Shown here piece by piece: positions 8,791 to 42,010 of a DNA stretch of 42,010 bases. Within the stretch, counting starts at the first letter, position 1, and every line of letters starts with the position of its first letter. The notes beneath the pieces are model-generated. The model saw only the letters and a program-made list of their open reading frames with translations. It made no database searches and had not been told where the DNA came from. This DNA comes from Ministeria vibrans ATCC 50519 (Eukaryota > Protista > Filasterea): NCBI GenBank assembly GCA_943704425.1, contig CALSCP010000486.1, forward strand, positions 91,447-133,456. Direction: 5' to 3'. The translations under genes were made by a program, and so were the position numbers.

Positions 8791-8889
8791 TTGAAAAGTG
8801 CAAACTCAAAACCGATTGATGATACTGACGACTGACTGACGATCACTTATTCGAGCTCTCTTTTGAATAATGACTTTTCAAATATTTTG

Positions 8890-9335
8890 ATGCGCTTTCA
8901 CTTTCGACAGTTCATAGTCATCTTCTTGGGTGCCTCTTTGCTGTGCCTGGTGCACATGCAGCATGATCTCAGCCGCACCCTCGACGAAAATGCGGCTCTG
9001 CCCCCCCCACCACCGCCGCCGTTGCCGCCACACAAGGGCGTGGCGCATGAGGAGGAGGTCGAACCGTTAGAACGCCGAGATCATCCTGCTTCGTGCCCCC
9101 TCGAGGTTCCTGCCTCTGCTCGGTTTCCCCACTGCAATGCCAAACTTGCATGGATGAAAGATCACTGGCGAAGCGACAAGTGTTACGCCGAGTGTGGCGT
9201 TGACGGTTCGATCTGCTCCTTTCACGCGTACCTCTCCATTGTCGAGCACCACTGCCCGACACGCACCGACATGGCGATGCCGACCATGCACGCGAGCTGT
9301 ACCAATCCCGTAGACACTGTGTTGGAATACAGGCG

Positions 9336-9413
<78 letters not shown>

Positions 9414-18962: not shown

Positions 18963-20626
18963 TCATTCACTTTTGTTGACACCCAATTCCTTATAGAGCG
19001 TATCATACGATTGTTGCTCAACACCGCTCTCCTCCTCCTCCTTACTCTCACTCTGCGGCTGTGGCTCAGTACTCTCTGAATGAGCCCAAAACGGTTGTTT
19101 CGGGGCACTCGTCTCACTCGTCTCAGTCACTTTCTGTCGTTTCGTTTCTGTCTCACTTGTACTCTCTGGTTCGTCCGTTGTAGGTTCTTCGGATCGTTCG
19201 CGTTTGGTCGCTATTGGAAACAAAACAGAAGTGTTAGATGGGAGAGGAGAAAAAATAAAGTGGTAGAGAAATAGAGAGAGAACAAAAGGATAAAATATAA
19301 ATAATTATTATAATATAAATATAATTATTATAATATTATAATAATTATATAATATACGTATATATTTGTGTGTGAGCAAAATAAAATTACGTTGAGTGGG
19401 TTCTTGAGGCTTTGGAGTGACAGTCTAAAGCGAAAAAAGTCAAAAAATGAGAATGGACAATCGGGTTGACTATAATAACATACTTCTGCTTCTTGAAAGA
19501 CTCTCTTTGGGGGCAGGGTGGACTGCAAAAGAGGATCGACAGGCTGAGGAAGCAAAGGAGGTTGGTAGAAGGACTGGGCAGGGCCCTGTTGTGACGACGA
19601 CAGTGGCTGTTGCGGTAGTGATTGAGGTTGTTGAGGGGGCTGGGTGTAGTACTGTGGGCCTGGTTGAGAGTAAGGCTGTGCTTGGCCGTAGTAGTATTGT
19701 TGTTGTTGTTGTTGTTGTTGATGCTGCTGTTGTTGGGCGTAGTAATCCTGTTGTGTGTGTGTGTGTGTGTCAGTGTGATGCGCTCATGGAGTATATTGTA
19801 TTGTTTTTTAATATTACGTAGCCAGTGGTCATTTGCGGCTGCTGCTGCTGCTGTTGTTGGTAGTGTTGCTCTTGTTGTTGTTGCGGCTGACCTGCCGATG
19901 CGTAGTAGTCGACAAACTGCGGTTGTTGTGTGGCCGATGAGCCGTGACGGCCAATTTGGTCTTCGTACTGTTTGCGGACGGACGCGACGAGACTCTCGCA
20001 CAGACTGCGCGCGCGAAGAGCCCCATTCTGGTCAATATGGCTAAACACGTGGATGTTAAGATGCAATTCTGTCTCACACAACTCACAACAAAGCCAAAAC
20101 AATAATGTACCTAATGTGGAGGTGAATGGGCTCGTCCGACTCGACGTTGGTGCGGCGGTCAATGAAGCCAGAGCCGGCGCCGCGCACTGTGACACGCGCG
20201 CCCGTCTCGTCCTGGATGTGCCTAATGAACTGTCCGCCGGGTCCAAGCAGTTTGGGACGCAATGGAAGGGACGGGTGGGGCGACTCAATGTTGATGTAGA
20301 TGCGCTCTTCGCAGTAGCGAGTGCGCTGTGGGGGCTGGGCATAGTCGCCTACACCGGGAGGCGGTTGCTGTCCTTGCGTGTTGAAGCCCAGGCCGAAGTG
20401 CGGGCGGGCGGGCGGGGCGCCGNNNNNNNNNNGTGATCAATGGCGTGCGAGGGTACCGTGCGCTGCAGCAACTGTATGGCGGGCGGGCGGGGCGCCGTAC
20501 TGGGGTGCAACGGGACGAGGAGCATAACCTTGCATGGGCGTCGGGAGCATACCACGTGGGGGTGCACCGTAGCCAGCGTAAGGCTGCTGCGGCATCTGCT
20601 GTGGCTGCGGTGGCTGTTGCTGTGGC

Positions 20627-20659
<33 letters not shown>

Positions 20660-21415
20660 GCTGGGGGAGCGCCAGGCTGTTGGGGTGCGGCAAATCCCGA
20701 TCCTGGGACTGGTGCACCTCCATCACCTGCGGCTGCGCCTTGCGGCGGCTGGCCTGGCGTTGCTGTTGGTGGCGCTGTGCGCTCCGTCTGGTCCACTTCC
20801 TTGACGCGCTTCAGGCAGTCGGAGACAGCGGTACGCGACGTCGCACTGATCAGCAGGTACAGTGGACGTTCATTGCTGCCCGCCTGAGCCAGCTGTTCGC
20901 GCACCGCGGCTGTCATGTAGCGCCCGCGCGTCGTCAAAGCAGCGCCTGTCTCCTGCGAGATCTCGCTCAGCTTCTGTTTGCGCGTCAGCAGCATGCGCGC
21001 CGGCGAGTCGTTGATCTCAAACTCAGCCTCAAATTGCTGTTCATCACCCAAGGCGTGCGTATGGCAAGAGCAACACGCAGAAAAGAGAGTGTTAAAGGAC
21101 GAATGAGAGACGATTGTCGAACGAAACAGTAGAAAAAAAAAAAAAAAAGAAAACGTTTTTTTTCTCCTTACGTTTTGTCCAGTTTCTCTCACGTCGGGAT
21201 CAGCGGCGGAATCGGGTGCGGACGCTGCTGCGGCAGCCACACTAGGCGTGGCTGGCGGTGCCGGGGCCGCGATTCCCTTTGCGGCGAGCATTGCTTGGAC
21301 GCGCGCAGCCGCCTCCTGCGCTGCTGTGCTGCACGGGGAGGGGGACAGAAAGAACAGCGGCATTAGCGATGGGCGCGTGATCGGTTAGGTATGACGGGCA
21401 GCGCGCGAACCTCAT
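18963..21415 (-). CDS. Two-KH-domain RNA-binding protein (KHDC4/BLOM7-like) with Q/P-rich linkers; spans the gap at 20423-20432
   Basis: AAARVQAMLAAKG, EFEINDSPARMLLTR...ETGAALTTRGRYM...RPLYLLISA, and KLLGPGGQFIRHIQDETGARVTVRGAGSG...EPIHLHI. The start and 3' exon boundaries are approximate. Confidence 0.8.
20423..20432. other. Assembly gap (N run)
   Basis: Run of n. Confidence 1.
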
Positions 21416-22030: not shown

Positions 22031-23245
22031 TTAATGAACCCAAATTTCTTCGTCACTGACAAGCTCCCGCGCACTTCTGATCAGTGGGCCATAATCCTTG
22101 GCGTTTCCAGCGGAAAACTTCTCTGGCGTGAGCATGCGCCAGCCCCCCGGGACACGGTAGAGACATGCCATGATGACGGCTTGGTGCGTGCCGGCGCGAC
22201 TGATCTCGTAGCTGTCGCATACGGGCGTCTGGCGCTCACATGTGCCGTCGTAAATGTTGATAAAGGGCCGTTTGAAAGCCGCAATGGTAGGGGCGTTCCA
22301 GGCACTGAGGGTGAAGAAGAGGCGGTCAATGTTGGGGCTGAGTTGGTTGGGAAAAATGTGAATGACGTGGGCACATCCACTTTGCGTGGGCCTGTCACCG
22401 CTGTGCATCACCGCAGTCATTTGGGTTGGATTGACACTTAAATCAAAGTCGCCGGAGCACGATTGTTGCGGCATGATGTGATTGAAGTCAATGTGTTCGA
22501 CATACTGCGTGCCAGCGAACAGCAGACAGGAGCCATCGAGGTAGTCTGGTCCGTGGTCGGGATAGCACCATTCCAGGCTCAACACCACATGCTGAAGACT
22601 ACGTGCCGTTGCATACACCTCGAGCACATAGACAAGACGAACCTGGCAGCCATCCTCAATGCGATAGTCACACAGTCGCATCGAGCGGTTGCTCCGCGTC
22701 GCAAGCACAGGCGTGCCGCGAAACAAGAGTCGCTGGCGTGCGACACGCAAGCCACTCTTGGCCTCAATTTCCTTCATCAGCTCCAGCACCAAAAGCGCTC
22801 CAGTGATGCGGAACGGCAGTTTTTCGCCGTTGACCAGGACAACCTCAATGTCGCCTTGCGCCGTCGCGTCGGTCGGATCAACCCTCAGCTCTGTCAAGTC
22901 CGCACTTTTCGGTTCAAGCCCCTGGGAAGAGTACTTATGATCCAGCGCGCGCTGAACCCTTGCTCTCGTGGACTCGTCGACCGGCGCCTGGCACAGCGGA
23001 CAGTTGTGGCTCGCCAAAAAGTGTTTGCCGACGCACTGCGCGAAAAAAGCAAAAAAAAAGCAAAAAAAAGACACACCAACGCGAAGTACGTCAGTCTGCC
23101 GCACAGGCACAGCGGGAATCCCGCTTAACAAACAGCTTACCGCAAGGCACCAGGACGGCGCATGCTCACATCGGCTCGAGTAAGTTTTGTCGAAAAATTC
23201 GCACGTCAACTTGGACTGCGAGCATTTCCCACACTGCGTCGGCAT
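22031..23245 (-). CDS. RING finger + ubiquitin-like + TerD-like domain protein (~369 aa after removing intron 23036-23140)
   Basis: The spliced N-terminus CGKC-x18-CEH-x4-CLA|C-x10-CPLC has C3HC4 spacing. The middle, IEVVLVNGEK...VLELMKEIEAKSGLRVARQRLLFRG...LCDYRIEDGCQVRLV, follows the ubiquitin fold pattern. The C-terminus, LSLEW..DYLDGSCLLF..HSGD..IDRLFFTLS..AVIMACLYR..GWRM, follows the TerD/TerZ pattern. Confidence 0.78.
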   Translation of the reverse strand: MPTQCGKCSQSKLTCEFFDKTYSSRCEHAPSWCLAVSCLLSGIPAVPVRQTDVLRVGVSFFCFFFAFFAQCVGKHFLASHNCPLCQAPVDESTRARVQRALDHKYSSQGLEPKSADLTELRVDPTDATAQGDIEVVLVNGEKLPFRITGALLVLELMKEIEAKSGLRVARQRLLFRGTPVLATRSNRSMRLCDYRIEDGCQVRLVYVLEVYATARSLQHVVLSLEWCYPDHGPDYLDGSCLLFAGTQYVEHIDFNHIMPQQSCSGDFDLSVNPTQMTAVMHSGDRPTQSGCAHVIHIFPNQLSPNIDRLFFTLSAWNAPTIAAFKRPFINIYDGTCERQTPVCDSYEISRAGTHQAVIMACLYRVPGGWRMLTPEKFSAGNAKDYGPLIRSARELVSDEEIWVH

Positions 23246-23596
23246 CGTACTTCCCTCTCCTCGGATACGATGCCGCAGATCGCAAAGGAACAGATGAAGC
23301 GTAGAAGAAAAAAAAAAAGACTGCGATGAGCGATCTGTGGAGACAGTGAAGTGTGTAAGTACTGATCACAATTATCGCTTTGAACGGTCGAAAATGTGGT
23401 TTTGATGACTAAGCATCAACTCCAAATATTTTTTATCCACGGAAGTAAAACTACTCTATTTCACATTTTTTTCTGTTGAAGAGTCGTCTGATTCTTCATT
23501 CTACTTCCCAAGCCGTGGTCTGCAGTGCACCGCGTGGCTCCGTCTCCCGTGCCCCGCCCCCGCCCCTCCTGAGCGGTCGACCCGTCCGTCGTCAAC

Positions 23597-23705
23597 ATGT
23601 CAGCGAAAGACCATCCCCGCGTACGTTTCGCGCCCTCCCACTCCCCTCATCATCTGCTACTATGAGAGTTATCACCATTCCTCTGTCCGCTTTGACGATG
23701 GATTC

Positions 23706-23738
<33 letters not shown>

Positions 23739-26700
23739 AGTCGGTCGTTTTGGCGCTTTGTAAAAGAAATCCATCGAATTTCGAGCTTGTCAGCGATGCT
23801 GAGGCTTGCAACGCTGCCCAATACCGATTGAGTGAAATGAAAATTGTCAGTAAAACCCTTGATCAGGCTCCGAGCGTGTCTGTTAAGAAGACTGACTCGG
23901 ATTTTGAGGTAAAAAATTTCGCTGTCTTTTTTTTCCCACTCACTTTTTATTTTTATTCCCCCAACATTTTTTCTTAGGCGACACTCACTTACAATGAGGA
24001 AGTTACAAACACAGAGTGGACCAAACTGATTAAAAAGATGCAGGCGAAACTAGGCGTTGTTGCGGCGCAAGCAAAAGATAAGCTCGGGAGCGCTGTGACG
24101 GTACGCAGATTAAACGATTCCGACTCTCCCTTCGCCCCACGCTCTCTTACACTCTCCTTTACAGCTGAAATTCAATGTGAAGACCGTTTCTGAGCTCTCA
24201 TCGAAGAATCAGCCTTCCCAAACGACGGTCACGTCCACTGCGAAATCGTCCGCTTCTGCTGCGTCGACTTCAACGTCTCCTGCTGCTGCGTCGTCGTCGT
24301 CCTCCGCTGCATCCTCCTCATCAGCTGCCACCGCAGCTAACACTGCATCGACTCCAACGTCTCATGATGCTGCGTCGTCGTCGTCCTCCGCTGCATCCTC
24401 CTCGTCAGCTGCCACCGCAGCTCACACTGCATCGACTCCAACGTCTCTTGGTGCTGCGTCGTCGTCCTCCGCTGCCGCTGCCGCAGCTCTCACTTCATCA
24501 ACGTTTCGTTCAACACCTCCTGCCACATGGAAGCAGCCTCCAGCAATGGTCCCCAGCGTGCTTGACGATGGATTTATACTGTGCACGTTTCATTTTGTTC
24601 ATCCTAGCGAGTGGCAGCCTCTCTCCGACAAGAATCGCGCTTTTGTTCTGGGTCTCTACGATGGCTTTCAGTTGCCCAAACCCGATTCAAACTTGAAGTA
24701 CGACTTGGAGTTGTTTCCCGCTCCCAACCCCTCCAATCCAGTCCTATCAACACGTCCTGTTCGCTTACCTCTTAATGAGCGACACTCAAACACCTTCAAA
24801 GTGTGGGCTAGCAATTGCGCTCGTGGCGCTTCCTATGGACTCCTTGGTTTCAAGCAATCTTGGGAGCCGTACCTCGAGTCTCATCAAAACCGTCATATGG
24901 TCGGAGAGTGCACACATCAGTTTTGCTTTCCTGCACTGAACTACACGTCTCACTACGATCTGGTGAACCACCTCAAACGCTTCCTCTCCGCGTCTCTGTG
25001 TCACATCAGCACCGACCCAATCAACGGCTTTGACATGATTCGCGATCTCCAGACCTGCTTCTTGCGATACCGCAACGCTTCACTCGTACAATTCTCTGCG
25101 AATCTTGTAAACTCTATCCGCGATGCAGTTCCGAGAGCAAACCTCGAGGCCAGCCTCGTCTTTGCCACCGCTGTGTGCAGCCACCTCGACAGGTCATCGA
25201 TGACACAACTCTCGTCGCTGATCAGTCGCCTCTTGCGTCCCTCGGCCGACTGGACTCCCGTTGACGTGCGCTGGAAAACGGGCGCTCTTCGCTTCCTCTC
25301 AGACGCGGTCACCCGATATTCGGCGTCCATTTCTCTTACCGACATCGGCCGCCTTCTAAGGTATGTGCAATTGAAGGCAATATCTCACTTATATACGCTC
25401 TTTCCTTAGTCTCTGCGACGATTTTCAGCCAAACATGATTGCTGCTGTTGAGTCGGAAGCGCGTCGCCGTGCAGAGCGTGCCTACCTCACCAAATCTGAG
25501 TTTCAGACCTTCCTCAACACCATTTCGCAGCGCGAGCACCTCTTCAATGTGGCCATCATTGCAGCACACGATCTTGAGACTGCTCTTCTCCTTGTTGACC
25601 ATGTCAGCAAGTGTGAGCATCCCAATGAGCGGATGGTAGAGCGCGCCTACGAGCGCCTTTTTGCCATTCTCTCCTCGCAGACGCACAACACCCACCGCGC
25701 CACCACCATGAATGATCTCATCCGCGTCGCCGAGATCTCCGCACAGAAAAACCTCCCCGACCTGTGTGTCCGCGTCATCGATCTTCTCAACCAGCGTCTG
25801 ACTGCTCCAACAACGCGCGCGCACGCGCAGGTGACCGCTGAAGACGTGGTCAAGGTGCTCGGCTGCGTCAACATGAAGGTCGAAGGCACTGCCGAGAGGG
25901 TACTGAGATTGCTGACGACTTCCGTGACCCAGCTTGGCCCAAAGTCGATGTGTACCATTCTGTTTGCGCGCCGCTGCTCAGACTCGCTCGGTTGCATTCT
26001 GACGCCCACCGCGGTCGAGACACTCGTGAGCTTGTGCTTTGAAAAGTCTCCACAGACGCCCACAGACATTGTCAAGGCGCTGTGGTCGCTTGCTGAGCAA
26101 ATGACACTGAGTGTGACTCGCGACGGTGGCAGTAGTATCGTCGCCGAGCTCCTCCTCACAGCCGCTGAGCGGGTCACGACTCATCTGCTTGTGACACCCT
26201 CCCCCTCTCGGTTCTCTGTCAAAAATGACCAAGCCATGCAATTTCTCGGCAGGGCAGCCGATCTGGAGCGCACCATGCCAGAGGCACTGCGTTCTCGCCA
26301 GTGCTCTCTGCTTGTCAACACTGTCGATGTGGTGCTTCGTTCCGTCATCGAGCCATTGACGGCAAAGACCAGTTCCAATCTCAATGCGACTTTCCTCGAC
26401 CTGCTTCGCACCGTCTCCGGCTCCAAATCAAGTCTTGCGTCTGCGCCAGGCTCCATTGCCAAGCTTGGCAACATTGCCCGTCGTATGGTGTCCGCCGTTG
26501 CCACCGCGGCCTGCCAGGACTCGCTAATGCTTCTGCCTACAGCGCGTTCAACCATTCTCACCGCCAGTGCCAATCCGGCCAGCGCCGAGCGCGTGCGTCT
26601 CTGGCTTGAACTTGTCGAAGTGTCGTGCGCGTCCGATCATCTACCCAGTGTGCCACCTCAACTGGAACAGTTGCGTGGCATCGTCCGCGAGACCTGTGCC

Positions 26701-28542
26701 ATGGTCGCCATGGAAAGTCCCGTCAGCGATGTCACAGACTGCCTTCGTCTGTGGCACGGCGAATACTTCCGCAACCTGCTCACTCGCGTCGATCCGGCCA
26801 CGGAGGGACTGGTCGAGCAGGCTCGCAACCTGCTTGATGAGCAAAGCCGTCACAAGGACGACCTCGACGGATTTCTCAATCTGCTCAACCATCTTACTGA
26901 TTCCCTTACCGACCTCAATGGGCTGCAAGAGGACTTCAACAATGTCTGGGATCACCGCAACGATTCCCGCCTTTGCGATGCTCGCGGCGAGAAGTTCTGG
27001 ACCACTCCGCTGTGGAGTCTACTTGAGCGTGCACCTGATCAGCTCATCCAGGCGCGTCGTGCCGCCAAGGTGTTTCCTCTCACCCTCGTGACCTTCCTGA
27101 AGAAGCAGGTCAAGCAGTTGGCTCCCCAAGGTCTCCTTGTCTCACAGTTCACTTCCGTCGACTACGATGTGACACTCACCAAGATTGTCGAGGAGTGGCG
27201 CGAGGTCATGACGCACTTGGCCTCGGCCGACCGTCTCTGTCGCATGCCAGTGTCGCTGTTGCATTCACTCTGGCAGCTCGAAATGAACCCAGCGCCCAAC
27301 ACAGATATTCAAAATGCCGCTTTGCGCGCGGTTGACAATGAGATTTCTGTGCTCTCTAAATTCAACGTCTCCGTCGCTCCCCAGGCACACGCGTCCCTGT
27401 TGTCTTTTCAGAATGTGCACCTATGGCATCGGCGGGTTCAGTCGCTGCTCGGCGCTCACAGCGTCCTTGGCTTTCCCGACCGCTCCTCGGACGACCTTCG
27501 TATCGACTTTGTGTCTGGGGACGAGGATACACTCGTGAAACTGTGCTTGGGCGCGTCCAACAAACTCTGTTCCGACGACAGTGAGCTTGGCCAAGTCCAC
27601 GTTTTGGTGGGATCACTCGAACGCCAACTTGGGCATTTGCCGCTGAGCGTGTGGGACTTTTTCGAGTCGGCCTCTCGTGCCGACTCTCTCCTGGCCTTCA
27701 TGGACAAGTACAAGAGCAACGAGTTGAAGAACCTTGTTGACGGACACGAAGATGTGGACTCGCTGCGTGGAAACGCTAACACGTCAAGTTTGCGCGAGCT
27801 ACTTGCCGTCGACAAGTTTATCCGACCCGTTGTGACCGCGTGCAACGCCAACGGGGATGGTTGCCGCCTTAAGAATTTTATTGAGGTTCTCTCTCGCGAC
27901 GAGCGTGTTCAAAACATCTCACGTGCACTGCGCAGTGGCATTGCGAACGTGGTCGCTTTTGAGCGTCTCGCCGACACCATTGGCAACCGCACGGAGGCCA
28001 CCAAGAGCATTGTGGTGGAGGCAGTGCGAAACGGCACCGTCACCTTCAAGGCATCCGCTCGCACGCAGCTGTGCTCGGTCACCCTGGCCGTGGGCGAGAG
28101 TGGAGAGAGCTATAGCTGGGGTAAGATTGAGGACTTGCGCACGCGTGTGCAGCTTCAAATCAATCGAGCTGCAAGCGACGCCATGGCCGAGTTTCATCTC
28201 GATGATGATGACGAGGAGGAGGGGCACCAGCGTGACCTGACCGTCACCTTTGCAACTTTCCTTGAGATTGTGCAACTCATTGAACAAGCGGGCCCAACCT
28301 TTCTGCAGCTCCACCACTCGGGACACTTTGAGCACCGATTGGACCAGCGCATCGAAACTGTGCGAGCGGATGCGAACGAGTTGCGCGAGTTTCTTGCTCG
28401 TGTTCAGCTGGAACTGCAGAGTTGGACCGAGTGTGTCGATAGTGCGCGCGCCCGTCATCCGTCTCTACTATTCTTCCACACGCGCCAACTGCTATTCCTG
28501 GACCAGAGCCTTTCAGAGACGAAAACGAGTGAGTGGGAAACA

Positions 28543-28583
<41 letters not shown>

Positions 28584-31500
28584 CAACGACGACGATGACG
28601 ATGACGATGAATTTCTGATGGCCTCCTCGTCGACGGCCGGCTTTGATTCTCCTGCCGCTGTCGCTGGTGGCACTCAAGACTTGCTTGACTTGCTCTCGTT
28701 TGCTGCCAAGACAGAGATGGATGCTTCCATGGTGCCTCAACTTTCACAACAGTACCGCCAGCAAGTGAATGAGAATACCTCGGCGGCAGATCGACTCAAC
28801 GCACTTGGAGTTGTGCTCGACTCCGCTCTCATTGGTCGGCGTCACTCAGTGCCACACACCGCTGTTGCAAGCGACAGTCTCCCTCGTGAATTCCAGCGTC
28901 TGCGTGTCGAACCTGGCCAACTGCTCAACCTATACACATCGTCGCAAAATGACATGTTGGCCGCAGTGCTGGGTTTGTACGTCATCCAGAGTCAACAACC
29001 CACGGCCGAGCAGGTGATTCTCTGTCGCGCATCCACACCCGAGTCCGAGCTGCTCCTCTTTGTGCAGCGTTGCTTTGACTTGGTGCCCAACAGCTCCAGT
29101 GCGGATGGTGGCACTCCGCCTCTCTATGTCATTGTAGGACCTACAGCGCTTCCATTTGAGCATCAAGACACTCTTGCGCGCACTCTTGACTTGCGTCTTC
29201 GTCAACAAAGCGGAAACCAACGTCCTTGTATTGCCATGGTCCACTTTGATGGGGGTCGCCGCCTTGATTTTGCTCAGGGCTTATCGCGCAAAGTCACTCT
29301 CCCGCGCGTCTCAGCCAACGTCCTTGGCACGCTGCTGACGGCCTTTGTGAGCTCGCAACGTCGCCAAGTGCATTGTGTCACGTCGACGACGGCCGCTCTT
29401 GGAAAAACCGAACTTGTGCGTTCCCACGCCATGGCGCAGCACCGCTTCACGCGCCAATTGCTTGTCACAGGCTCGATCAACAGCGTTGAACTAGCAGGTC
29501 GACTGCGTGATCTCGAGTTGCATGCCAAGCGTGACGCGCTTCACATTGACATTGCGTCGCTTGAAAACGCCCCTGAGCTGGCACTCTTTCTCTTTGAGCT
29601 GCTCATCCTTGACTCGGTGGTGCTTAGCAATGCACGTTTCAAGCTGCCCGCGCAGTGCCCCGTATACTTTGAGATTGCCAACACACTGGGCGAGCGTCTC
29701 GAGCGCAGTTTGACTCTCTGCACTAGCATGGGCGAGCATCATCGACTTGACTGGTCGCTGGACCGTGTGATCTTCAGCGAGGCGCCCTTGAGCGACGACC
29801 AGGTTGTTGCGCACTACCTTGACTGGCTAGACACGGACCGCGTTGCTGTGGCCGACCTCGTGTTCATGGGTGCACAGGCAAACTGTGCCGAGAGTGTGGC
29901 GCAGGTGCGCTGTCGTGAACTTCTGCACCACTACTTTGTGAATCACATCGAGGGAGGCATCTGCTCTTTTGCCTTGGTGGGTGTTTTTGTCCGTGTGCTT
30001 GCCAAACAGTTGCGGCTTCTCACCGAAAGCGATTTCTTCTCCGCTGAGAATCTGAGCAAGGCGGTGGATCCTGACGATGCAAAGCGTATTCGGCGTTCCC
30101 TCTTGAAAGCTCTGGTGTGTGTTGCCTCGGAGTTTGCGGCACCGTCAGCAGCGGGTGCGCGCTCGCGACAACGTGTCGGCTGGGATGACGCTACAGACGA
30201 ACTTGTGGGCCGCATGGCACGTCAGAGTTTTGGCTCAAAGAACCACCTGCTGGTGATGATGAGCACGACGGGCGACGGCAGTCTCACGCCATTCTATCGC
30301 GACGTCAACGCCGATGATGTGCGCGAGTCGGGCCTTGCAGCCATCATGGCAACAGTTGGTGGGAAGTTGCCTGACTATCATGGCATGACGTCGACTGAGC
30401 TGTTGTCTCAGCTACAGCGTGTGGTTGGCGGAGAGTCGGCCGCGGACATTGCCTTGGGCGGCTACGCCATCACATCGGACAATCTGCTAAAAATGATGCT
30501 TGTGCAGCTGCGAATCGAGGCAGAGGTGCCGGTGGTCATCATGGGCCACACGGGCTGCGGCAAAACGTCGTTGCTGCGACAGCTTGCTCGCGCCCGTGGC
30601 ATGGAGGATGAGACCTTTTGTGTGCTGCCTATGCATGCGGGCATCTCGGCCGACGACATTGTTCAGTTTGTGCTCGACTGCGAGGCCAAGGCGGACGCGA
30701 TGAACACCGCGGTTTGGGGTTTCTTCGACGAGATCAACACGTGCAACCACCAGGGACTCATCAATGACATTCAGGTACACCGAATGATCCAGGGGCGTGC
30801 CGTGGACACACGTGTGGTTTTGCTTGCCGCGTGTAATCCTTATGAGAAACGTGCTGTTGCAAGTGGTGCGATGGAGAGCACACAGGCGGGTCTGGCGAAT
30901 GTCAATGCGGCGCAAGACGAGCTCAGCAAGCTGGTGTACCGTGTCTTTCCGTTGCCCGAGTCTCTACTCGACTTTGTGTGGGACTACGGCGCGCTGGACA
31001 GAAACGAGGAGGAACGCTACATTTCCACCATGGTGCAGTCCTTTTGTGCGCGTCCCGATTTCGACGGGGTTGCTGTTGGCTTTGCCGATACCCTCACGCG
31101 CATGCTCACCGTGTGCCAAGAATTCATTCGATCGTCGCACAACCTTCAGTTTGCAACGAGTCTTCGCGACGTGCGACGTGCACTCGAACTCATTCCGTTC
31201 TTCCTTGATTTTTTCGCGCGGCGTCGTGACGCGGATCAGAGCCTAAGCTTGGCGGACCGGCGCCAACGCAACCGAATTCAGCTCATTGGTGATGATGGGA
31301 TGGGCATCCGCTACACTTTACATCTGCTGTATCAACCCTTTGTGCGCGCCTGCGTTCTCGCCGTGTCCCTCTGCTACCACGCGCGGATTTCGGACGAGGA
31401 GCAGCGCAAGAACCTGCGTCATGACATATGCACTGAGCTGAACGTCTACGGACGCAAAGATACAGCGACCAACGGGAAGAAGCTTCGAGGCACCGATTTG

Positions 31501-34500
31501 ACAGACTTGCTGGAAGAGGAACAGATGGACTTTGCAAGTCGGCTCTCGTACGAGACGCATCCGTACACAGCCAAGAACGGCTCGCTCCTTGAGAATGTAT
31601 TTGTGAGCTTTGTGTGTCTCATGCAGCGCATTCCGCTCTTTATTGTGGGCAAGCCAGGCAACAGCAAGTCGCTTGCACTGCTGCTCTTGCGCAGCTCGCT
31701 CAACGGCAGGCAGTCAGAAGACGCACTGCTTAAGAAACTACCCGGCATTCAGATGGTTGCTTTTCAGGGAAGCGAAGACTCCACGTCGGAGGGTGTGCTG
31801 CAGGTGTTCCACAAGGCCGAGGAGTATGTTGCTGAGGACACACTGAGTGCAGTGCTCCTGGACGAGGTGGGTCTGGCCGAGCAGAGTCGACACAACCCGC
31901 TCAAGGTTTTGCACAACCTTTTGGAGCCGGCGAATGGCGAAGCGCTCAAGGTGGGTGTGATTGGGATTAGCAACTGGCACTTGGACGCGGCCAAGATGAA
32001 TCGCGGCATTCATTTGTCGCGACCCGACCCCTCCTGCGAAGACATGGAAAAAACGGGCAGTGAGTTGCTGAAGGCGTACGGCTCAACGGTGGTCGACCAG
32101 TGCCGTGGCGTCCGCCTGCGTACACTGGCACATGCGTCGCACGACTACCTCTTTGGGCGAGCACAGATCAAGGCGCACTTCCACGGTCTTCGCGATTACT
32201 ACGCACTGACAAAGGCGCTTGGTCGCGCCATTGAGCAGTCGACGCGAAGCACCCAGGTGTCGGTGAACCATTTCATGTTCCGTGCTGTCGAGCGCAACTT
32301 GGGTGGCTTGCGCGAGGAGCAAGAGCGCATCTTCAGCTCGTTTTTGGCCATCACCGACGGAGGTCAGGCCTTTGAGCGACTCTCTGTGGTCGATTTGATC
32401 AAGGCGAATTTGCAAGACCGCGATGCGCGCCATTTGTTGGTTGCCACTCGTGGCGAGTCGGCGTTGCAGATTATTGAGCGTCTGCTTAGCGAGAGTGACC
32501 TGAAGCGTCCTTGGGAGACGTATCACGGCAGTCGATTTGAGGACGACCGCACGCTTGACGAGTACGCCTATCGCATTGTGTCGCGCATCATGGTCGCCAT
32601 GGAGATGGGCCATGTCATCATCCTGAACCGTCTTGAGAGCATCTACGGCTCACTGTACGACATGCTTAACCAGAACTTTGTGCAATTTGGCGGCAAGCGA
32701 CAGTGTCGTATCGCGCTGGGCGCCCACTCAACTCCCAACTGCACGGTCCATGACGACTTCCGATGCATTGTCCTTATGGACGAGCACAAGATGCGTGAGT
32801 ACGACCCGCCTTTCTTGAATCGCTTTGAGAAGCAGGTGCTCCACTACGACGATGTGCTACAACACGAGACGCACCGGGAGATTTTGCGTGCTGTCGAGGG
32901 TTGGCTCATGAGTGTTTTTCCCACTGAGATGGCGCGCATTGATGCCTTCCCTTGGTGGCTCGAGAACGAAACGCTGCCCTCCCTTGTCGTCAGTGTGATG
33001 CCTCGACTTGAAGATCTCATGAACGAGGACACACCGCTCATTCGCGAAGAGAGATGTCTCGTCGCAGTGGAATGGTGCAAACAAGACTTGTTGCGCACCG
33101 CGTATGTCGACGCCATTGTGCGTCTGCACACGGCCACATTCATCACGAGCGTTAACGCGGAATTTAAAAGCGTTGACGACGACAGTTGCACTGCTTCGCC
33201 TACTCATGTCGATCCAGTGCTGCAGAGCTTCTACGACTTGCCACAGACCCTTGACGCACTTGTTCACGAGAGCCTGAGCAGTAGCAGCAGCCACGACGAA
33301 TGGATGCGCCTTGCTGTGGCCACGTCGTGCAGCATTCTGACGACGCTTCCGGACACCATTGCCGGACTGCAGTGCTTTCGTCCATGCAAGCTGGGTGTGT
33401 TTCGCAAGGAGAGCGAGATGATCAGTTACGTGAACGACTTTGTGAACGACACGGCAGCCGAGCTGTGCATTGTACAAGTAGACGCTCTGACCGACGCTCC
33501 CAATGTGCAACTCGCCAAGAGCATCCTCGAGAAGGCTCAACGCGAGACGTCTGTTCAACGAGCACGCACTACGTCAGCCTCGCTGGCGACGGCGCACGTT
33601 GCCAAGCATGTTTGTCTCCTTTTTCATGTGGACCGTGCGGCCGAAGCCACACCCTCCAACTGCAAGACGCCCTGGCAACTCAACTTCTGTTCGGGATGGT
33701 CTTTGGCGACGCTTGATAAACTTCTGAGTGACGACACGGAGCCTTTGAGTGTGCCACAGCTTTTGTGCACGACGTTGTGCGATGTGATTGCCAACGATGA
33801 CATTCGTCAGCTGAGCTTTAAGGAAGTGGCGCTCGCCGAACTCGAATGGTGCTTTTCTCGTATCCACTACCCTTCTGGGCGGAATGAAGTAGGGGACTTC
33901 GAGGAGCAGGAGCAGGAGGAGGAGGGGAACACATCGGGCGAGACGAGTGGCAATGTGAATTCACACACTGATGCCATGGTGGCTGCTCTGCGTGTCGACT
34001 TTGTGCAAGAAGGTTCCCTCTACTGCGCACTTCGCAATCTTGTTGTCGGCTATGTGCAGAGCAAAGAGGGCCCGCAGGTGGGCCAGTGGGTGCGTGATCT
34101 GGTGGCAGACAAGGGACGTCTCATTCAGTTCCATACCTTTGAGGCAGCCGTTTTGTCGCGTGTGCGCGAGGCGGTGCGCCGTCCACTGGTGCGCTTACTC
34201 TTCCAGCTTGAGCAAAACGATGCGCTGCGCCTGTACTTCTCACTTCAGGAGCGCAAAGCGAACCAAGTTGAACCGGAAACGACCCAGTTGCTCTTGGAAG
34301 CGTACCATAAGCTGCTGCACAACACTGAAGTGGTGTCGCTGTCGGATGCGCAGGCGCAGGCGCAGGCACCACTTCCGGAAGACAGTGAGGGTGCCGCGGA
34401 GGTTGACTATCAGCGGGTGCGAATGTCGCGTCATGAAGAAGATGCCAACGGCAATGAGATTTTTGTGCTGGGTAGTTTCCGATTTGGACAGCCCGCGCAA

Positions 34501-37500
34501 TTCCCCTTTAGCGCACGCATCGTTCAGATTCTCGAGGGCTACCACCTGGAATTCATGGAAATGCTCTTGGAGCGCCGCGACGAGCTTGTGGGCGTGACGG
34601 ATGGTGACGGTGATGCTGTGATGGGCGGCGTGAGTGACGAGGACGACGAAGCGTTGCGTCGACGTCAGGGGGATGTGGAGGCGGAGGCGCGACGAGATGT
34701 GAGAGGACGCTTTGAGTTGCTGGCACTCGAACGACTTCCGATTTTGCGCGAAGACTGGATGCAACAGCTGATGCACGAACGATACCTGCCCGACATGCTC
34801 GCGGTCAAAGCCCTTGGCTGGCGTTTGTCAGTTGCGCAGCGCAGCACGCTCTTTGAAAAGCTGATATTGCGTCACGCCTCGGATGCTCTGCTTTCACCGT
34901 TGGAGCTGCACTTTTCGCTATGGGAGTACCAGGACATGCTTGTGGAGGAGCTTGAGCTGTTTTCGATCGTGCAGCAATGGGACAATGGCAGTACGGTAGA
35001 GATGATGGTGAACGCGCTGGGCACACGGCCTTTGGTGGAGGTTGCTGCTGAGGCACACCTTGCGCGAGCGCGCACGAGTGCTTCTATGGTGGACGTGGGT
35101 GAATGGACCGTGACCGCATGGAAGATTATCAAGCAGGACTCGTACACGCGCGAAGCTGCGGAGAATGCGAGCTGGTTGCGCCCGCTCAACGTGACTGGGA
35201 ATCTCATGATTGCGCTGCGTCTCTGCTACGAGTATGCCGATGCAGTGTTGCTGCCGTCGACGGTTAAGACGGCGGAAGCCAAGGCTCGGGCGTTGTTGCA
35301 GCTCGCCGAAGTGGTCTGCTCCAACGCGGGTGAAAAGCTTTTGCATGACCATTGGACTTTGAAGCGTGTGTGGAAAGTGAGTGTGGATGATGAGTGCGAG
35401 GAAGAGGCGGAGCGTGCCGCCTCATTTTGGCTGCGTGTCTTGACACTTCTCATGCGCAACGATCAAGTCATGGGGAACCCTGTTATGCGAGCCAGTGTGA
35501 TGGATCATTTGCTTGCCACAAACGATGTGGAGCGCCTCAAGAAGCTTGCCGGGGGTGATGGAGTGGAAGCAAAGGGTGACAACGGTCATGAGAGTGAAAG
35601 TGAGAGTGAGAGCGATGTAGACGAGGAAGAGGAAGAGGAAGAAGAGGAAGAGGAAGAGGAAAAGGCCGATGCGAATGTCGTAGAGAGGCGTCTCTTTGAG
35701 TGGGCCCAAAAGATCACCATGCCGCTGCGTGAGCTTGTTGACAATGCTGTGGGACTCGATGAAATTGATCGGCTCGATTGTTTGATGGAGACTGTGCGTG
35801 ACGGCCAGTACGTCGAGAGTCGCGTGCTTCTGCATTGCTTGGATGCCGTGCTTCAGCGTCACCGAAACCTGCTTGGTTACACTGATACGCCCGCCTTTGC
35901 CGCACTAGTGGGTGCTCTGTATGTGGACATGGTCTTGCCACTGATGGGTCCTTTGAGTGTAGTGGAGCATCCAGAGCTCTATGTGAACTGGGCGCGGGAG
36001 TCGCTGGTCATTGACGAGGAAACTGGTACAGTGGTGACGCGGGAAGAGCAGCACGAGCGAGCGTACGATGTTCCCGAGGCGTTGCGCGAGGCAATTGAGA
36101 AGGAGTCGACGTCTCTATTTCCACGACGGACGGAGCACACGGACGACTTGTTTGACAATGACAACTGCGACGGTGTGATGGAGGAATCGTATTTGCGGGG
36201 AACTGTGTGCGACGAGGATGAGCAGAGCATGCTGAGCCAGGAGATGGTGGTCGGAGTCCTGCCACACGTTGCGCGAGCATTGCTGTCGCACACTGCCTCT
36301 CCCTTGCAGCAGTGTATGGCAACGGCTCTGCTGCGCGGAGTTTTGTTGTGGGTGGCGCGAGTGGAAGCCAATGTGGTGCTGACCACGAATCAATGTTTGG
36401 CGGGGTTCCGTGTCGATCATCAGCTTCGCACTGCGCTCAACGCGGCCTTTGATGTACTGTACACGGACACTTGCATGGGTACGCATGTTGCTCGAGGTGC
36501 TGCCAAGTTCTTCCTCAAGTGTCTCTCAGGTGCGGGTTTGAGTGCCAGCGACATTGAAAGTGCAGCTTGTGCGAACCTGATCCAGTCGTACCCGTGGCTT
36601 GCGACACTGCTGCGTGAGTGTCGCGGAGACCAGCATCATGCGGAGCACACTGGTATCGCGGCTCGTCTTGGTGTTGATGTGTTTGCCGGGAGTGCCTGTG
36701 AGGGCGAACAGGGCTCGGTGGCCATGGCGCGTGCGTTTGCTTTGGTGGATCGTCTCGTCTCGAATCGTTCCCCCGCCGCGACCGACGAGGTTGAGGAGAA
36801 CGCTTTTTGGGAATCCGCCTCAAATGGCGACACGCTGTGTCGTAGGGCACTTATGATGGCAGTGGCATCCACTGGGATGCGACTGAGCGATGGTCCGCGC
36901 CAGACGGCAGCAGTGCGTCTGCAGGGCGTCATTCAGGAGCGAGGAGCCACTTTTGTTGTGCTGGCAAAGGAGCTGATGCGCTCTCTGCTGCAACATGGGT
37001 GCGTGTCACGCGCGCTTCCTGCACCCACGGCTACTGATGACTCGGTTCTTCACGTCCTGTCAGCCTTTCTTGTTGCACAACTGTCGTCGACGCCCGCCAC
37101 ACCGACTCCGTTTCACGAGTATCTCAAGTGTGCGCCGTCGTTGCAGAATGAGTTTGTGTTGACAATGGCCTCGAGCGAGGCGGAAATGTCGTTGGCGGCG
37201 GTGTTGCGAGCCGAAGGACAAACAATGAAGCGGTACGAATGTCCATGTGGCGAAATGTACCTCATTGGTGAGTGCACTCAGGCAATGGAGTTGTCGACTT
37301 GCCCAACATGTCGATCTCCTATTGGCGGCGAACGTCATACGGCGCTGCCCAATCAGAAGGTGGGCCCTGCCGTAGACACGAATGCAACGCGCCAGAACAA
37401 GCGTGGTTATGTTGTGTCGCGCACGCTGCAGCATGTGGCACTATCGGAGCGCCACTTGCGTCCCGTGGCGCTGAGCACACTCAATGTACTCATGCACGTT

Positions 37501-39666
37501 GCGTTTGCCTCGGGTGATGCCCTGCGCGAAGAAATCCACTGTAGCTCAGTGCACGCTGAGCTGGCGCGCGAGGCGGCATGGGCACGTGCAAGGCACTTTC
37601 TTGGTGTGTTGATGGAGCGTCTCAACTGCAGTCCGGGAGAGGCGCTTGTGTTCTGTGTGACTGCGCTGGAGCGGGTGTTTGCGGACGGGGTGCTGTCGCG
37701 ACTGGGTGCTCACTTGGACACAGCGGTAAAGCGCGACGAATGGGAACTGCGCTTTGAACGTGATGTAGTGGGTGAAATGGGATCGAACATGCCAGCGCTG
37801 GGGCGAACGATGCGCGAGCGGCAGGAGACACTGATGGAGCATTTGGGCGAGGCACGCAACCGCGCGAGCGTTCAGTCCATTGTGCTCGAGCTGGTGCAGC
37901 GACCGCCTATTTCGTTTGCACCCGGTAGTGACGCATGTCGTGCACACACAGCGTTTCACGACGAGCTACCCGACAGTTTCCGACAGATTGAGCTTGTGAC
38001 GCGCAGTGTGTTGACGCGGCAATTGGAAGCAATGTCGACGAAGGACGGCGAGAGCCAAGGGACGTCGCACGCGACACTGGCACTGCTGTTGCGTCGTGAG
38101 CGTGTGGTTAATGCCTTCCCATTGCTTATTCCCATTGTGGAGTTTGTCAAGCTTGTGTCGGTGCAGCTGGAACACCGAGTGACGCGCGACACGGCGAGCA
38201 CGCAGTCGTTTACCGCCTTTGTGAATGGGTTGCCTGAGGTGCAGCGCAGGGGAGGCGAGCGAAAGTTGATGCGGTTCCTTGCGGCGTGGCATCTGCTGCG
38301 ACGACGCACGGTGGCGCATCCCGTGCCATTGATGGGACTGCTGAACAATGGCTCACTTGAGGTACCGTACGGCCGCCACGAGTGCCAGAAGCTGAAGATG
38401 GAGGAGCTGACGAAGGAGTCGCCTGTGATTTGTGCGTGTCCCGACACGCGCGATTCGGGATTGGTGATTCGCACGCTGATGCGGGTCCTAGCGGAGGGCC
38501 AATCGACATTGGTGGGCACGCTACAACCGCGTGTTGTGCATCGGGCAAAGCGAGTGTTGGCGGCCGAGCGACGCGATATGATTGAGTTCCGTCTGCCGTC
38601 GGCGACACTGGGCCAGTTCTCGGTGCAAGGGGTGCGGATGGGCACGGGCACGGATGTGCGGGTGGATGTGCAGGCGCTAGAGCAGCAGAAGGAGCTGGAA
38701 GGCGTGCTGGGCCGGGCGGCGTTTGACACGGGAAGCGAGCGGTGGCTGCCACGCTTTTACTTCAGTGGCGAGGTGTTTTCGTCTGAGCTGGCGCTGTTGC
38801 ATCGAGCGCGCAAGGCGGTGCGACAGGAGGCACTGACGCCAGCGGCATGTGAGCGTCTCAAGGCGGATGTGGTGGTGAAGGACGCGGCGACGGAGCTGCT
38901 GTCGAGCATGGGCATGGTGTTTATGCAGATGGTACGACGACGAGGTGAGTCGCCCGACGAGATGCTATCACGTTTTGTTGAGCGGTGGCTGCGCGAGCGA
39001 CTTCCGGAGAAGGTAAAGCGTGCGTTAGAGACAAGCCAAGAGCTGGCGGATGTGCGGTTGAAGCACGCGGTGGCACTACAGGAGTGTCTTGAAGACATGT
39101 TGGGCAGTCGACTGATGGAGAGTGTGCCGACAAGCTTCAAGACGCGACTACCAGATCATGTGGAGACTGACCTGCGTCATCTTTGCGGCATTGGTCATGG
39201 GCTGGCGGTGACGGTCGCTCCCGAGGTGATGATGTCGGCCCTTCAGCGATTCACCTACCGCTTTTTGGCGGTGCGCGAGCCACTGGTGGCCGCTGCTGCA
39301 CCATTGAGCATGTATCTGTCGCGTGAGGAGTACTATGAGTGGCCTGCGGGCGCGCTCGGCGGCAAAGACTTTGACCTGGTGGTCAACGAGACGCTGCTGG
39401 TGGAGCACTGCTACGCGGCGCACACGATGCTGCGACGGGAGCTGACGCGTCGACGGGAGCAAGAGGAGCGCGACGAGGAGACGCGACGGAAGGCTGCGCT
39501 GGGCAGTTCCACGGGAGTTGGACGGGCAAGCGAGGCGTCGCGCTCGGTCTTTGCGAGTGGACCCTCTGAAAATGTGTCAGGAAACAACGAGAACACTGCG
39601 GGTGTGTTTGCGTCTCGCGCGCGAACCGGTGGGAATGTGCGCAACAAGAAGGCCAAGAGGCGATGA
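23597..39666 (+). CDS. RNF213: RNF213/mysterin-like giant AAA+ ATPase / RZ-finger E3 ligase, ~5255 aa
   Basis: Phase-consistent exons 23597-23620, 23741-23908, 23978-24100, 24165-25360 and 25410-39666. Motifs are AALGKT (~29390), VVIMGHTGCGKT (30544) with FFDEINT, LVYRVFPLPESLLDFVWDYG, LFIVGKPGNSKSLA (31648) with LLDEVGLAE..NPLKVLH, ISNWHLDAAKMNRG, SLYDMLNQNF and PFLNRFEKQ. The RZ finger is at 37231-37338. Confidence 0.92.
24261..24490 (+). repeat. 84-nt (28-aa) coding tandem repeat, ~2.7 copies, Ser/Ala/Thr-rich
   Basis: ASTSTSPAAASSSSSAASSSSAATAANT / ASTPTSHDAASSSSSAASSSSAATAAHT / partial third copy. Confidence 0.9.
28543..28609 (+). repeat. (GAT/GAC)n poly-Asp tract inside the RNF213-like CDS
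   Basis: Trinucleotide run. Confidence 0.9.
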
Positions 39667-39673
39667 GAGAGAT

Positions 39674-39712
<39 letters not shown>

Positions 39713-39860
39713 TGAGTGAGTATGGTGCTCAGTGTGCGTAGAGTGCTAAGAGTACAAAAATACAATACAATAATTTAATTATCCAATTTATTCGCGGACA
39801 CACAGCTATGCAGCAGGAAATCGATTATCCAAAGCGTTCGGAACCAAGTAGAAGGTGCGC

Positions 39861-41490: not shown

Positions 41491-41539
41491 ACACAAAGAG
41501 CACAGTCAAGAAAGGCATCTGGACACACACGCATACATA

Positions 41540-41655
41540 GAGGAGAGAGAGAGAGGAGAGAGAGAGAGGAGAAAGAAACAAAGTGATAGAGAGAGAGAGA
41601 GGAGAGAGAGAGAGGAGAGAGAGAGAGGAGAGAGAGAGAGGAGAGAGAGAGAAAG

Positions 41656-41730
<75 letters not shown>

Positions 41731-41919
41731 AAGAGTTCAAGAGTTCAAGAGAGAGAGAGAGAGAGTTCAAGAGTTCAAGAGTTCAAGAGTTCAAGAGAGA
41801 GAGTTCAAGAGTTCAAGAGAGAGAGAGAGAGAGTTCAAGAGTTCAAGAGAGAGTTCAAGAGAGAGAGAGAGAGTTCAAGAGTTCAAGAGTTCAAGAGTTC
41901 AAGAGTTCAAGAGAGAGTT

Positions 41920-42010
<91 letters not shown>
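41540..42010. repeat. (GA)n microsatellite interspersed with GAGTTCAA 8-mers
   Basis: Directly visible; probably intronic in the PX gene. Confidence 0.95.

What the first reader, a model, noticed from the sequence alone, without database searches (positions are those of the whole stretch)
22031..39666. Candidate two-gene ubiquitin defence module: RING-less RNF213-like ligase head-to-head with a RING-Ubl-TerD gene
Seen: the two ATGs (23245 on -, 23597 on +) face away from each other 351 bp apart. The giant protein has the RNF213 AAA core and an RZ finger but no recognisable RING. The small partner has a RING, a ubiquitin-like domain and a TerD-like domain. Established: vertebrate RNF213 carries both RING and RZ and ubiquitylates LPS on cytosolic bacteria through the RZ finger. 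TerD domains belong to bacterial ter stress/anti-phage operons. Inference: the pair may be a co-regulated antimicrobial ubiquitylation system, with the small protein supplying RING activity in trans and a TerD ligand/membrane sensor. Caveat: head-to-head layout is the default in this window, so adjacency alone is weak evidence.
Basis: partly seen in the sequence, partly recalled or inferred. Interest (0 to 1): 0.85.

Follow-up and report, generated by a model that had tools for sequence, protein, structure and literature searches.

The report
Conserved RNF213-like ligase and RING-Ubl-TerD pair
A giant RNF213-type ubiquitin-ligase gene and a small RING/ubiquitin-like/TerD gene lie side by side here and in sea anemones, corals, amphioxus, probably an oyster, an amoeba and a dinoflagellate, so they are probably an old two-protein machine that, as far as I could find, has not been described.

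Summary
On the + strand there is an RNF213-like gene: one 4743-codon ORF (25435-39666) plus at least one upstream exon. It has the two Walker-competent AAA modules and a complete RZ finger, including the nucleophile Cys and the general-base His. It has no RING. On the - strand (23245-22031) is a 369-residue protein with a divergent C3HC4 RING split by an in-frame 105-nt intron, an internal ubiquitin-like domain and a TerD-fold domain.

The new result is conserved linkage. Relatives of the two genes are immediate neighbours in Nematostella, Exaiptasia and Branchiostoma (head-to-head), and apparently in Crassostrea virginica (neighbour known from its gene call only). They are also neighbours in Pelomyxa (tandem; the small gene is unannotated), Symbiodinium (tandem) and coral-type metagenome contigs (convergent). 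Both families place the window copy outside their metazoan clade.

This supports a dedicated two-gene module. The trans-RING, sensor and antimicrobial roles remain inference. RING-less RNF213-like giants are the rule, not the exception. The metazoan giants have lost the RZ nucleophile and base, which makes the partner's RING the likeliest remaining ligase centre there. I found no description of the pair in the searchable literature.

The parts
23141..23245 (-). Small gene, exon 1 (35 codons). It holds the start codon and zinc ligands 1-5 of the RING (C5, C8, C26, H28, C33).
   Evidence: Translation. Homologues start at the same place. Ligand columns are invariant or at least 90% conserved in 49 family members.
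23036..23140 (-). In-frame phase-0 intron (105 nt, GTAAGC...CGCAG with a T-rich tract) between RING ligands 5 and 6.
   Evidence: Sequence. A 35-residue insertion absent from all homologues. There is an intron at the same place in Pelomyxa, and exon 1 is 33 codons in Exaiptasia and Nematostella.
22031..23035 (-). Small gene, exon 2 (334 codons plus stop). It holds RING ligands 6-8, a linker, the ubiquitin-like domain (about 22631-22834) and the TerD-fold domain (about 22061-22603).
   Evidence: Pfam on exon 2 alone: TerD E 1.3e-7, ubiquitin E 1.6e-5. AF2 model pLDDT 85.7. Foldseek: TerD structures 3ibz, 2kxt and 2qz7 at TM 0.69-0.75, ubiquitin at TM about 0.9.
23246..23596 (.). Divergent spacer between the two genes (minimum extent; it may run to 24545). 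Likely a shared promoter region.
   Evidence: T29 run at 23708-23736. Function inferred, not tested.
23597..23620 (+). Candidate first mini-exon of the giant gene (ATG, 8 codons, then GTACGT). Unverified.
   Evidence: The frame closes after 22 codons unless it is spliced.
24177..25360 (+). Upstream coding exon of the giant gene. The 5' limit is unknown and the first in-frame ATG is at 24546. It contains an in-frame 84-nt x 2.5 Ser/Ala-rich repeat at 24259-24470.
   Evidence: Open frame. Repeat. No Pfam domain.
25361..25409 (+). 49-nt GT..AG intron that joins the upstream exon in frame to the giant ORF.
   Evidence: Sequence and frame arithmetic.
25410..39666 (+). Main exon of the RNF213-like giant gene. 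The uninterrupted 4743-codon ORF starts at 25435 and the stop is at 39664-39666.
   Evidence: 138 homologues at E 1e-10 or better.
30457..32916 (+). Dynein-like AAA core, aa 1675-2494. Walker A GHTGCGKT is at 30544-30567. There is a second Walker A at aa 2072-2079, and Walker B DE pairs at aa 1765-1766 and 2143-2144.
   Evidence: phmmer alignment to RNF213 chains, E about 1e-108. Translation.
37216..37353 (+). RZ finger, aa 3928-3973. Zn ligands are C3936, C3938, C3956 and C3959. The predicted nucleophile is C3947 (37273-37275) and the general base is H3968 (37336-37338).
   Evidence: Pfam PF20173, E 2.4e-15. Translation. Spacing of +11, +20, +23 and +32 from the first Cys matches human C4505, C4516, C4525, C4528 and H4537 (PMC11549300).

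Best explanation
The two genes form an ancient, dedicated two-gene module: an RNF213-family AAA+ ubiquitin-ligase machine and a small RING-Ubl-TerD protein that works with it.

Proposed mechanism, inferred step by step:
- The divergent spacer drives both genes together.
- The small protein docks on the giant, probably through its non-conjugatable ubiquitin-like domain or its RING.
- Its RING recruits a charged E2.
- Where the RZ finger is complete, as in this window, ubiquitin passes to the RZ nucleophile Cys3947 and then to the target, with His3968 as general base. ATP binding in the AAA core gates this step, as in RNF213.
- Where the RZ finger has lost its nucleophile and base, as in animals, the partner's RING is the only ligase centre left.
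- The TerD beta-sandwich is the input or targeting domain (small ligand, cation or surface).

Shown: the domains, the intact catalytic motifs and the conserved linkage. Inferred: physical interaction, E2 recruitment in trans, the TerD role and a defence function. The defence role is inferred by analogy with vertebrate RNF213 and ZNFX1.
For: Linkage. Relatives of the small gene lie next to RNF213-like giants in:
- Exaiptasia, head-to-head. The neighbour is 65% identical to the Actinostola giant over 1059 aa.
- Nematostella, head-to-head.
- Branchiostoma, head-to-head.
- Crassostrea virginica, head-to-head with a 5057-aa gene that has AAA_5, AAA_7 and AAA hits.
- Pelomyxa. An unannotated small gene lies 1.5 kb upstream of the giant on the same strand: tblastn E 2.6e-57, Pfam ubiquitin plus TerD.
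- Symbiodinium microadriaticum. The giant, with AAA and RZ, ends 330 bp before the small gene on the same strand, in three assemblies.
- Coral-type metagenome contigs L026, L024 and L041, convergent.
- Consecutive or near-consecutive NCBI gene numbers in Branchiostoma, Patiria and Dendronephthya.

Orientation differs between lineages while adjacency persists.

Vertical history. Both trees have a metazoan clade that follows the species tree, and both place the window copy outside it. A phase-0 intron inside the RING is shared by the window, Pelomyxa and cnidarians.

The small family is real. At least 60 full-length clusters at 50% identity appear among the best 150 hits. All eight RING ligands are conserved. 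Ubiquitin is found in 48 of 49 members and TerD in 46 of 49, and RING models are almost the only zinc-finger families hit, best E 6.8e-5. The AF2 model has pLDDT 93.

Catalytic logic. RZ ligases pair an E2-binding module with the RZ Cys/His. The window RZ keeps both residues. The animal giants lack both.
Against: No interaction, expression or activity data exist.

Linkage is not universal. No giant was seen within 10 kb of the small gene in Mytilus or Rhizophagus. The same holds for eight longer metagenome contigs. No small gene was seen within 10 kb of the giant on ENA contig L010.

The oyster neighbour's family membership rests on gene-call Pfam hits only. tblastn on the 4.2 kb available found nothing.

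No fusion of the two proteins was seen among 138 giants or the top 150 small-family hits.

Human RNF213 needs no RING for its known activities and binds its E2 through its own C-terminal domain. The window giant may therefore be self-sufficient.

The window protein itself hits no Pfam RING model, its H-to-C spacing is 4 rather than 2-3, and its TerD calcium loop is degenerate.
Confidence: 0.68

Rival explanations
1. The small protein is a regulator or substrate rather than a catalytic subunit. It would be an independent RING E3 (or a decoy with a ubiquitin-like handle) that restrains, marks or is consumed by the giant. The giant would do all ligase chemistry itself through its RZ finger and C-terminal domain.
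For: The window giant has a complete RZ finger and intact Walker motifs. In human RNF213 the RING is dispensable and the E2 binds the C-terminal domain. The Ubl lacks a C-terminal Gly-Gly and is internal, as in regulatory Ubl domains.
Against: The animal partners are linked to giants whose RZ has lost the nucleophile and base. There the giant cannot do RZ chemistry, yet the pair is kept. All eight RING ligands are conserved across 49 members.
Confidence: 0.17
2. Regulatory synteny only. The genes share a bidirectional promoter or regulatory block that is hard to break, but the proteins do not work together.
For: The four animal cases share one orientation and could be a single inherited arrangement.
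Against: Adjacency persists with different orientations: tandem in Pelomyxa and Symbiodinium, convergent in coral-type contigs. A shared bidirectional promoter cannot explain that. Both proteins belong to the ubiquitin system.
Confidence: 0.12
3. Chance adjacency in this window, with no relationship between the genes.
Against: The same two families are immediate neighbours in at least six other lineages from three eukaryotic supergroups.
Confidence: 0.02

Closest known systems
Vertebrate RNF213 (mysterin)
   Same: Giant size; dynein-like AAA core with two Walker-competent modules (E about 1e-108 to PDB chains); RZ finger with the same spacing of Zn ligands, nucleophile Cys and general-base His.
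   Different: No RING in the E3 module. The second Zn ligand is Cys at +2, not His at +4. The window gene sits outside the animal clade of a large RING-less family. It has a conserved neighbouring partner gene, which I did not find reported for RNF213 in the searchable library.
ZNFX1 (RZ finger plus 'Z-RING' E2-binding region in one chain; bioRxiv 10.1101/2025.09.05.674436)
   Same: An RZ nucleophile/base pair used together with a RING-like E2-binding module and a nucleotide-driven motor.
   Different: In ZNFX1 the RING-like module is in cis and the motor is an SF1 helicase. Here the RING is on a separate, linked gene product and the motor is an AAA+ ring. Cooperation is inferred.
RBR ligases such as Parkin (own knowledge, and the analogy drawn in PMC11549300)
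   Same: Ubl plus an E2-binding RING plus a catalytic Cys/His pair on another zinc module.
   Different: RBR ligases hold all parts in one chain, with IBR and Rcat folds. No IBR or Rcat is present here, and the parts would be split over two proteins.
Bacterial TerD / ter stress and anti-phage clusters
   Same: TerD beta-sandwich fold and motifs (D-x-LD-x-S, HSGD, hydrophobic core strands). PDB profile E 3e-11, Foldseek TM about 0.7.
   Different: Eukaryotic, and fused to a RING and a Ubl. The acidic Ca-binding loop GDN-x-TG-x-GDGDDE is reduced to GD in the window protein. There is no ter operon context.

Membership tests
RNF213 family (giant gene) | Dynein-like AAA core with two ATP-competent modules | tested here: met
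   phmmer to RNF213 chains, E about 1e-108, aa 1675-2494. Two Walker A and two Walker B motifs are visible in the alignment.
RNF213 family (giant gene) | RZ finger with Zn ligands, nucleophile Cys and general-base His | tested here: met
   PF20173, E 2.4e-15. Motif and spacing match the human residues.
RNF213 family (giant gene) | C3HC4 RING in the E3 module, as in vertebrate RNF213 | tested here: not met
   No RING HMM hit outside the RZ. No RING pattern or Cys cluster. The same holds for 125 of 126 relatives.
RNF213 family (giant gene) | C-terminal E2-binding domain and E3 activity | tested here: inconclusive
   Only aa 3919-4163 align to RNF213 by sequence. The C-terminal 600 aa are conserved with invertebrate relatives. 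Activity is not testable here.
RING finger (small gene) | Eight Zn ligands in C3HC4 order with cross-brace-compatible spacing | tested here: met
   Present in the window across the intron. All eight are invariant or at least 90% conserved in 49 members. The H-to-C gap is 4 residues, one more than the textbook 2-3.
RING finger (small gene) | Significant match to RING profile models | tested here: inconclusive
   The window protein has no hit; the finger is split by the intron and the exons were not joined. In the family, zf-RING_2 hits 8 of 49 members (best E 6.8e-5) and zf-C3HC4 hits 3 (4.2e-4), all below the gathering score. Foldseek output was dominated by TerD and ubiquitin, so the fold could not be checked.
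Ubiquitin-like domain (small gene) | Beta-grasp fold related to ubiquitin | tested here: met
   Pfam 24.5-25.0 bits against a cut-off of 25.4 in the window. 48 of 49 members hit. Foldseek TM about 0.9 to ubiquitin.
Ubiquitin-like modifier (small gene) | Exposed C-terminal Gly-Gly for conjugation | tested here: not met
   The Ubl is internal and runs straight into the TerD domain, with no Gly-Gly.
TerD domain (small gene) | TerD beta-sandwich and sequence motifs | tested here: met
   PF02342, 30.7-31.7 bits, above the cut-off of 25.3. PDB profile E 3e-11. Foldseek TM 0.69-0.75.
TerD domain (small gene) | Acidic Ca-binding loop of bacterial TerD | tested here: not met
   The alignment to 3ibz and 2kxt shows only H-S-G-D kept in the window. 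Most relatives keep two further Asp.

The most novel reading that the evidence does not exclude
RNF213-type AAA machines were ancestrally two-component ligases. The RING-Ubl-TerD protein would be their obligate E2-recruiting and signal-sensing subunit, dating to early eukaryotes. In animals the giant's RZ finger lost its nucleophile, so the small protein's RING became the sole ligase centre. The cis RING of vertebrate RNF213 would then be a later substitute for the trans partner. On this reading the pair is a widespread innate-immune or stress ubiquitylation system of invertebrates and protists that has gone unrecognised.
Probability: 0.25. Interest if true: 0.9.

Novelty: new variant of a known kind. 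Interest (0 to 1): 0.8.

Why it matters
RNF213 is a major cell-autonomous immunity factor and the main Moyamoya disease susceptibility gene. How it recruits E2 enzymes and recognises targets, and what its RING is for, are still open questions.

A conserved partner gene in the RING-less relatives, carrying exactly a RING, a ubiquitin-like domain and a TerD domain of bacterial type, gives a concrete and testable hypothesis for a split ligase and for signal input. It also gives tractable organisms to test it in (Nematostella, amphioxus, oyster).

Gene pairs that stay adjacent across eukaryotic supergroups are rare. Such pairs are themselves a useful route to finding functional partners.

Tried and rejected
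- Pfam RING detection on the window protein found nothing. I searched exon by exon and used intact homologues instead.
- Foldseek on whole-protein models returned only TerD and ubiquitin matches in the 50 shown, so it could not test the RING fold.
- The search for related loci with the 49-member alignment failed because no stretch was conserved enough. The 6-member TerD alignment worked, but most metagenome contigs were too short to be informative.
- tblastn of all giants against the 4.2 kb of the oyster neighbour found nothing. That case rests on the gene call alone.
- Acanthaster could not be judged, because the giant's 5' part fills the upstream flank.
- Literature searches found nothing on the pair. 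The 2012 Ter-systems paper (PMC4104200) is not held, so an earlier mention of the RING-Ubl-TerD architecture cannot be excluded.
- I looked for a Rosetta-stone fusion of the two proteins and found none.
- The source organism was not identified. It is a non-metazoan eukaryote on the evidence of both trees.
- A bacterial-style promoter and terminator scan of the spacer was uninformative.
Full report
**What is in the window**

The window is eukaryotic: GC is about 0.55, introns are short, and it holds GT18/MGAT5-like, myosin, GH20, KH and RRM genes. I do not take it for human.

*The small gene.* On the - strand, ORF 23245..22031 encodes the small protein.
- Its N-terminal zinc finger is interrupted by an in-frame 105-nt GT..AG intron, 23140..23036. 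All homologues lack those 35 residues.
Exon 1 and exon 2 were read and searched by reference, and the joined step was left out.
- Read across the intron, the finger is C-x2-C-x17-C-x-H-x4-C-x2-C-x10-C-x2-C.
- Exon 2 alone gives Pfam TerD (E 1.3e-7, above the cut-off) and ubiquitin (E 1.6e-5, 0.4 bit below the cut-off).
- Its AlphaFold2 model (pLDDT 85.7) matches TerD crystal and NMR structures (TM 0.69-0.75) and ubiquitin (TM about 0.9).
- The Ubl is internal and has no Gly-Gly, so it is not a conjugatable modifier.
- Against bacterial TerD, the window protein keeps H-S-G-D but not the acidic remainder of the calcium loop.

*The giant gene.* On the + strand, the 4743-codon ORF 25435..39666 is joined in frame to ORF 24177..25409 by a 49-nt intron, 25361..25409.
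- It matches solved RNF213 structures at E about 1e-108 over the AAA core, with both Walker A/B pairs present, and again around the RZ finger.
- The RZ finger (PF20173, E 2.4e-15) has the exact human spacing of Zn ligands. The nucleophile is C3947 (human C4516) and the general base is H3968 (human H4537).
- There is no RING. No HMM hit lies outside the RZ finger, and there is no RING pattern or Cys cluster in either ORF or in the 5' region.
The true start is unresolved between 23597 and 24546.

**Related sequences: the small family**

The small protein belongs to a real, widespread family.
- A profile search of 1.84 billion representatives returned about 60 full-length clusters among the best 150 hits.
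- Named members come from Cnidaria, molluscs, echinoderms, amphioxus and lamprey. They also come from a choanoflagellate, Glomeromycota, Amoebozoa (Physarum, Planoprotostelium, Arcella), the jakobid Andalucia, a centrohelid and Symbiodiniaceae.
- In 49 full-length members all eight RING ligands are invariant or nearly so.
- Ubiquitin is detected in 48 and TerD in 46. RING models are almost the only zinc-finger families hit: zf-RING_2 in 8 members, best E 6.8e-5.
- The Exaiptasia member models at pLDDT 93, with the helix expected after ligands 5 and 6.

**Related sequences: the giant family**

The giant belongs to a large family of RNF213-like proteins in invertebrates, plants, amoebae and other protists.
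- By pattern, 125 of 126 lack a RING. RING-less is therefore the norm.
- Protist and plant members, including the window, keep the full RZ finger.
- Animal members keep only the four Zn ligands and have lost the nucleophile Cys and the base His.

**The key result: linkage**

I started from the small-gene homologues or from the giant homologues and read 10 kb on each side.

| Lineage | Arrangement | Evidence |
|---|---|---|
| Exaiptasia | head-to-head | |
| Nematostella | head-to-head | |
| Branchiostoma | head-to-head | |
| Crassostrea virginica | head-to-head; neighbour identified by its gene-call domains only | |
| Pelomyxa schiedti | tandem; an unannotated small gene 1.5 kb upstream of the giant | |
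| Symbiodinium microadriaticum | tandem; the giant ends 330 bp before the small gene, in three assemblies | |
| Coral-type metagenome contigs L026, L024, L041 | convergent | |

NCBI gene numbers are consecutive or nearly so in Branchiostoma, Patiria and Dendronephthya. In Andalucia the two locus tags are seven apart.

No linkage within 10 kb was seen in Mytilus, in Rhizophagus, on ENA contig L010 or on eight longer metagenome contigs.

Both family trees show a metazoan clade that follows the species tree, with the window copy outside it. A phase-0 intron between RING ligands 5 and 6 is shared by the window, Pelomyxa and cnidarians. The pair therefore looks old and vertically inherited. Adjacency has survived changes of orientation, which a shared bidirectional promoter alone cannot explain.

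**How it most likely works**

From the literature:
- The RZ finger is a transthiolating centre with a Cys nucleophile and a His base.
- The RNF213 RING is dispensable for the known activities.
- RNF213 binds its E2 through a C-terminal domain.
- ZNFX1 pairs its RZ with a RING-like E2-binding region in cis.
- ATP binding to the AAA core switches RNF213 on.

Inferred here:
- The small protein is a dedicated partner of the giant.
- Most likely it brings an E2 through its RING, docks through its Ubl, and supplies an input or targeting domain (TerD).
- In this window the giant can still do RZ chemistry, so the partner may feed or regulate it.
- In animals the RZ has lost its nucleophile and base, yet the pair is kept. 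This points to the partner's RING as the remaining ligase centre.
- A defence role is an analogy with RNF213 and ZNFX1. It was not tested.

**Comparison and novelty**

The giant meets the AAA and RZ criteria of the RNF213 family but not the RING criterion. It is best called a RING-less RNF213-like protein, which is an already common annotation. The small protein's domains are each known.

What appears new is the conserved two-gene association. Six full-text searches found nothing on it. One relevant paper on Ter systems is not held, so prior mention of the domain architecture cannot be excluded.

I rate it a new variant of a known kind, with interest 0.8.

Noticed in passing
P0015, P0072, P0028, P0054, P0085 and other animal giants; window 37240-37338 for comparison: Animal RNF213-like giants keep the four Zn ligands of the RZ finger (CxCG...CPxC). 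They lack the nucleophile Cys (+11) and the general-base His (+32), which protist and plant members keep. This predicts a catalytically dead RZ in animals.
   Followed up: partly
L011:5319-6416 (+), Pelomyxa schiedti JAHLWZ010000957.1: An unannotated RING-Ubl-TerD gene with a 45-nt in-frame intron in the RING lies directly upstream of the annotated RNF213 gene. ORF L011:6947-7387 between them carries a B-box zinc finger (PF22586, E 1e-10) and may be an unannotated 5' exon of the giant.
   Followed up: partly
window 23036-23140; L011 about 5424-5468; L001 and L012 exon 1: The phase-0 intron between RING ligands 5 and 6 is at the same position in the window, an archamoeba and cnidarians, with lengths from 45 nt to 3.3 kb. 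This is an unusually old conserved intron position.
   Followed up: partly
P0152; L005:19170-20135: One family member is a VWA + Ubl + TerD fusion. A VWA gene lies 7.5 kb downstream of the oyster small gene. Bacterial ter clusters contain the VWA protein TerY (own knowledge). This could be a retained association or a gene-model artefact.
   Followed up: no
L002-L004:1-9673: Symbiodinium giants carry a BMT5-like methyltransferase domain after the RZ finger.
   Followed up: no
P0097, P0052: The Pelomyxa giant and a metagenomic giant carry a CBM20 carbohydrate-binding domain, the domain recently resolved in human RNF213 (PMC11549300). No CBM20 hit was found in the window giant.
   Followed up: no
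L014:6416-9381 and L013/L014:19568-20917: In Rhizophagus clarus the small gene is head-to-head with a UBA + Fy-3 domain gene instead of a giant. A second small-family paralogue lies 8 kb away.
   Followed up: no
window 24259-24470, 23708-23736, 28543-28610, 39676-39718, 41539-42010: An in-frame 84-nt x 2.5 Ser/Ala-rich repeat in the giant's upstream exon; a T29 run in the 5' region; (GAT)22 giving a poly-Asp tract in the giant; (GT)21 just after its stop codon; an (AG)n array of about 470 bp at the window end, which explains the strong purine skew there.
   Followed up: yes
window 8863-11199, 13162-14154, 1905-2708, 20437-21363, 7181-7981: Other genes in the window: a GT18/MGAT5-like glycosyltransferase in one 778-codon ORF (E 9e-162), a myosin head exon, a GH20 hexosaminidase exon, a KH-domain ORF and an RRM ORF. 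The organism was not identified. The giant's nearest relatives are a Picozoa-type EukProt entry (P0081, reading of the name from memory) and a JGI contig protein (P0053).
   Followed up: partly
L015:10001-16087; Durusdinium P0313/P0314: The small gene is tandemly duplicated in Patiria miniata. In Durusdinium two members have adjacent accession numbers.
   Followed up: no
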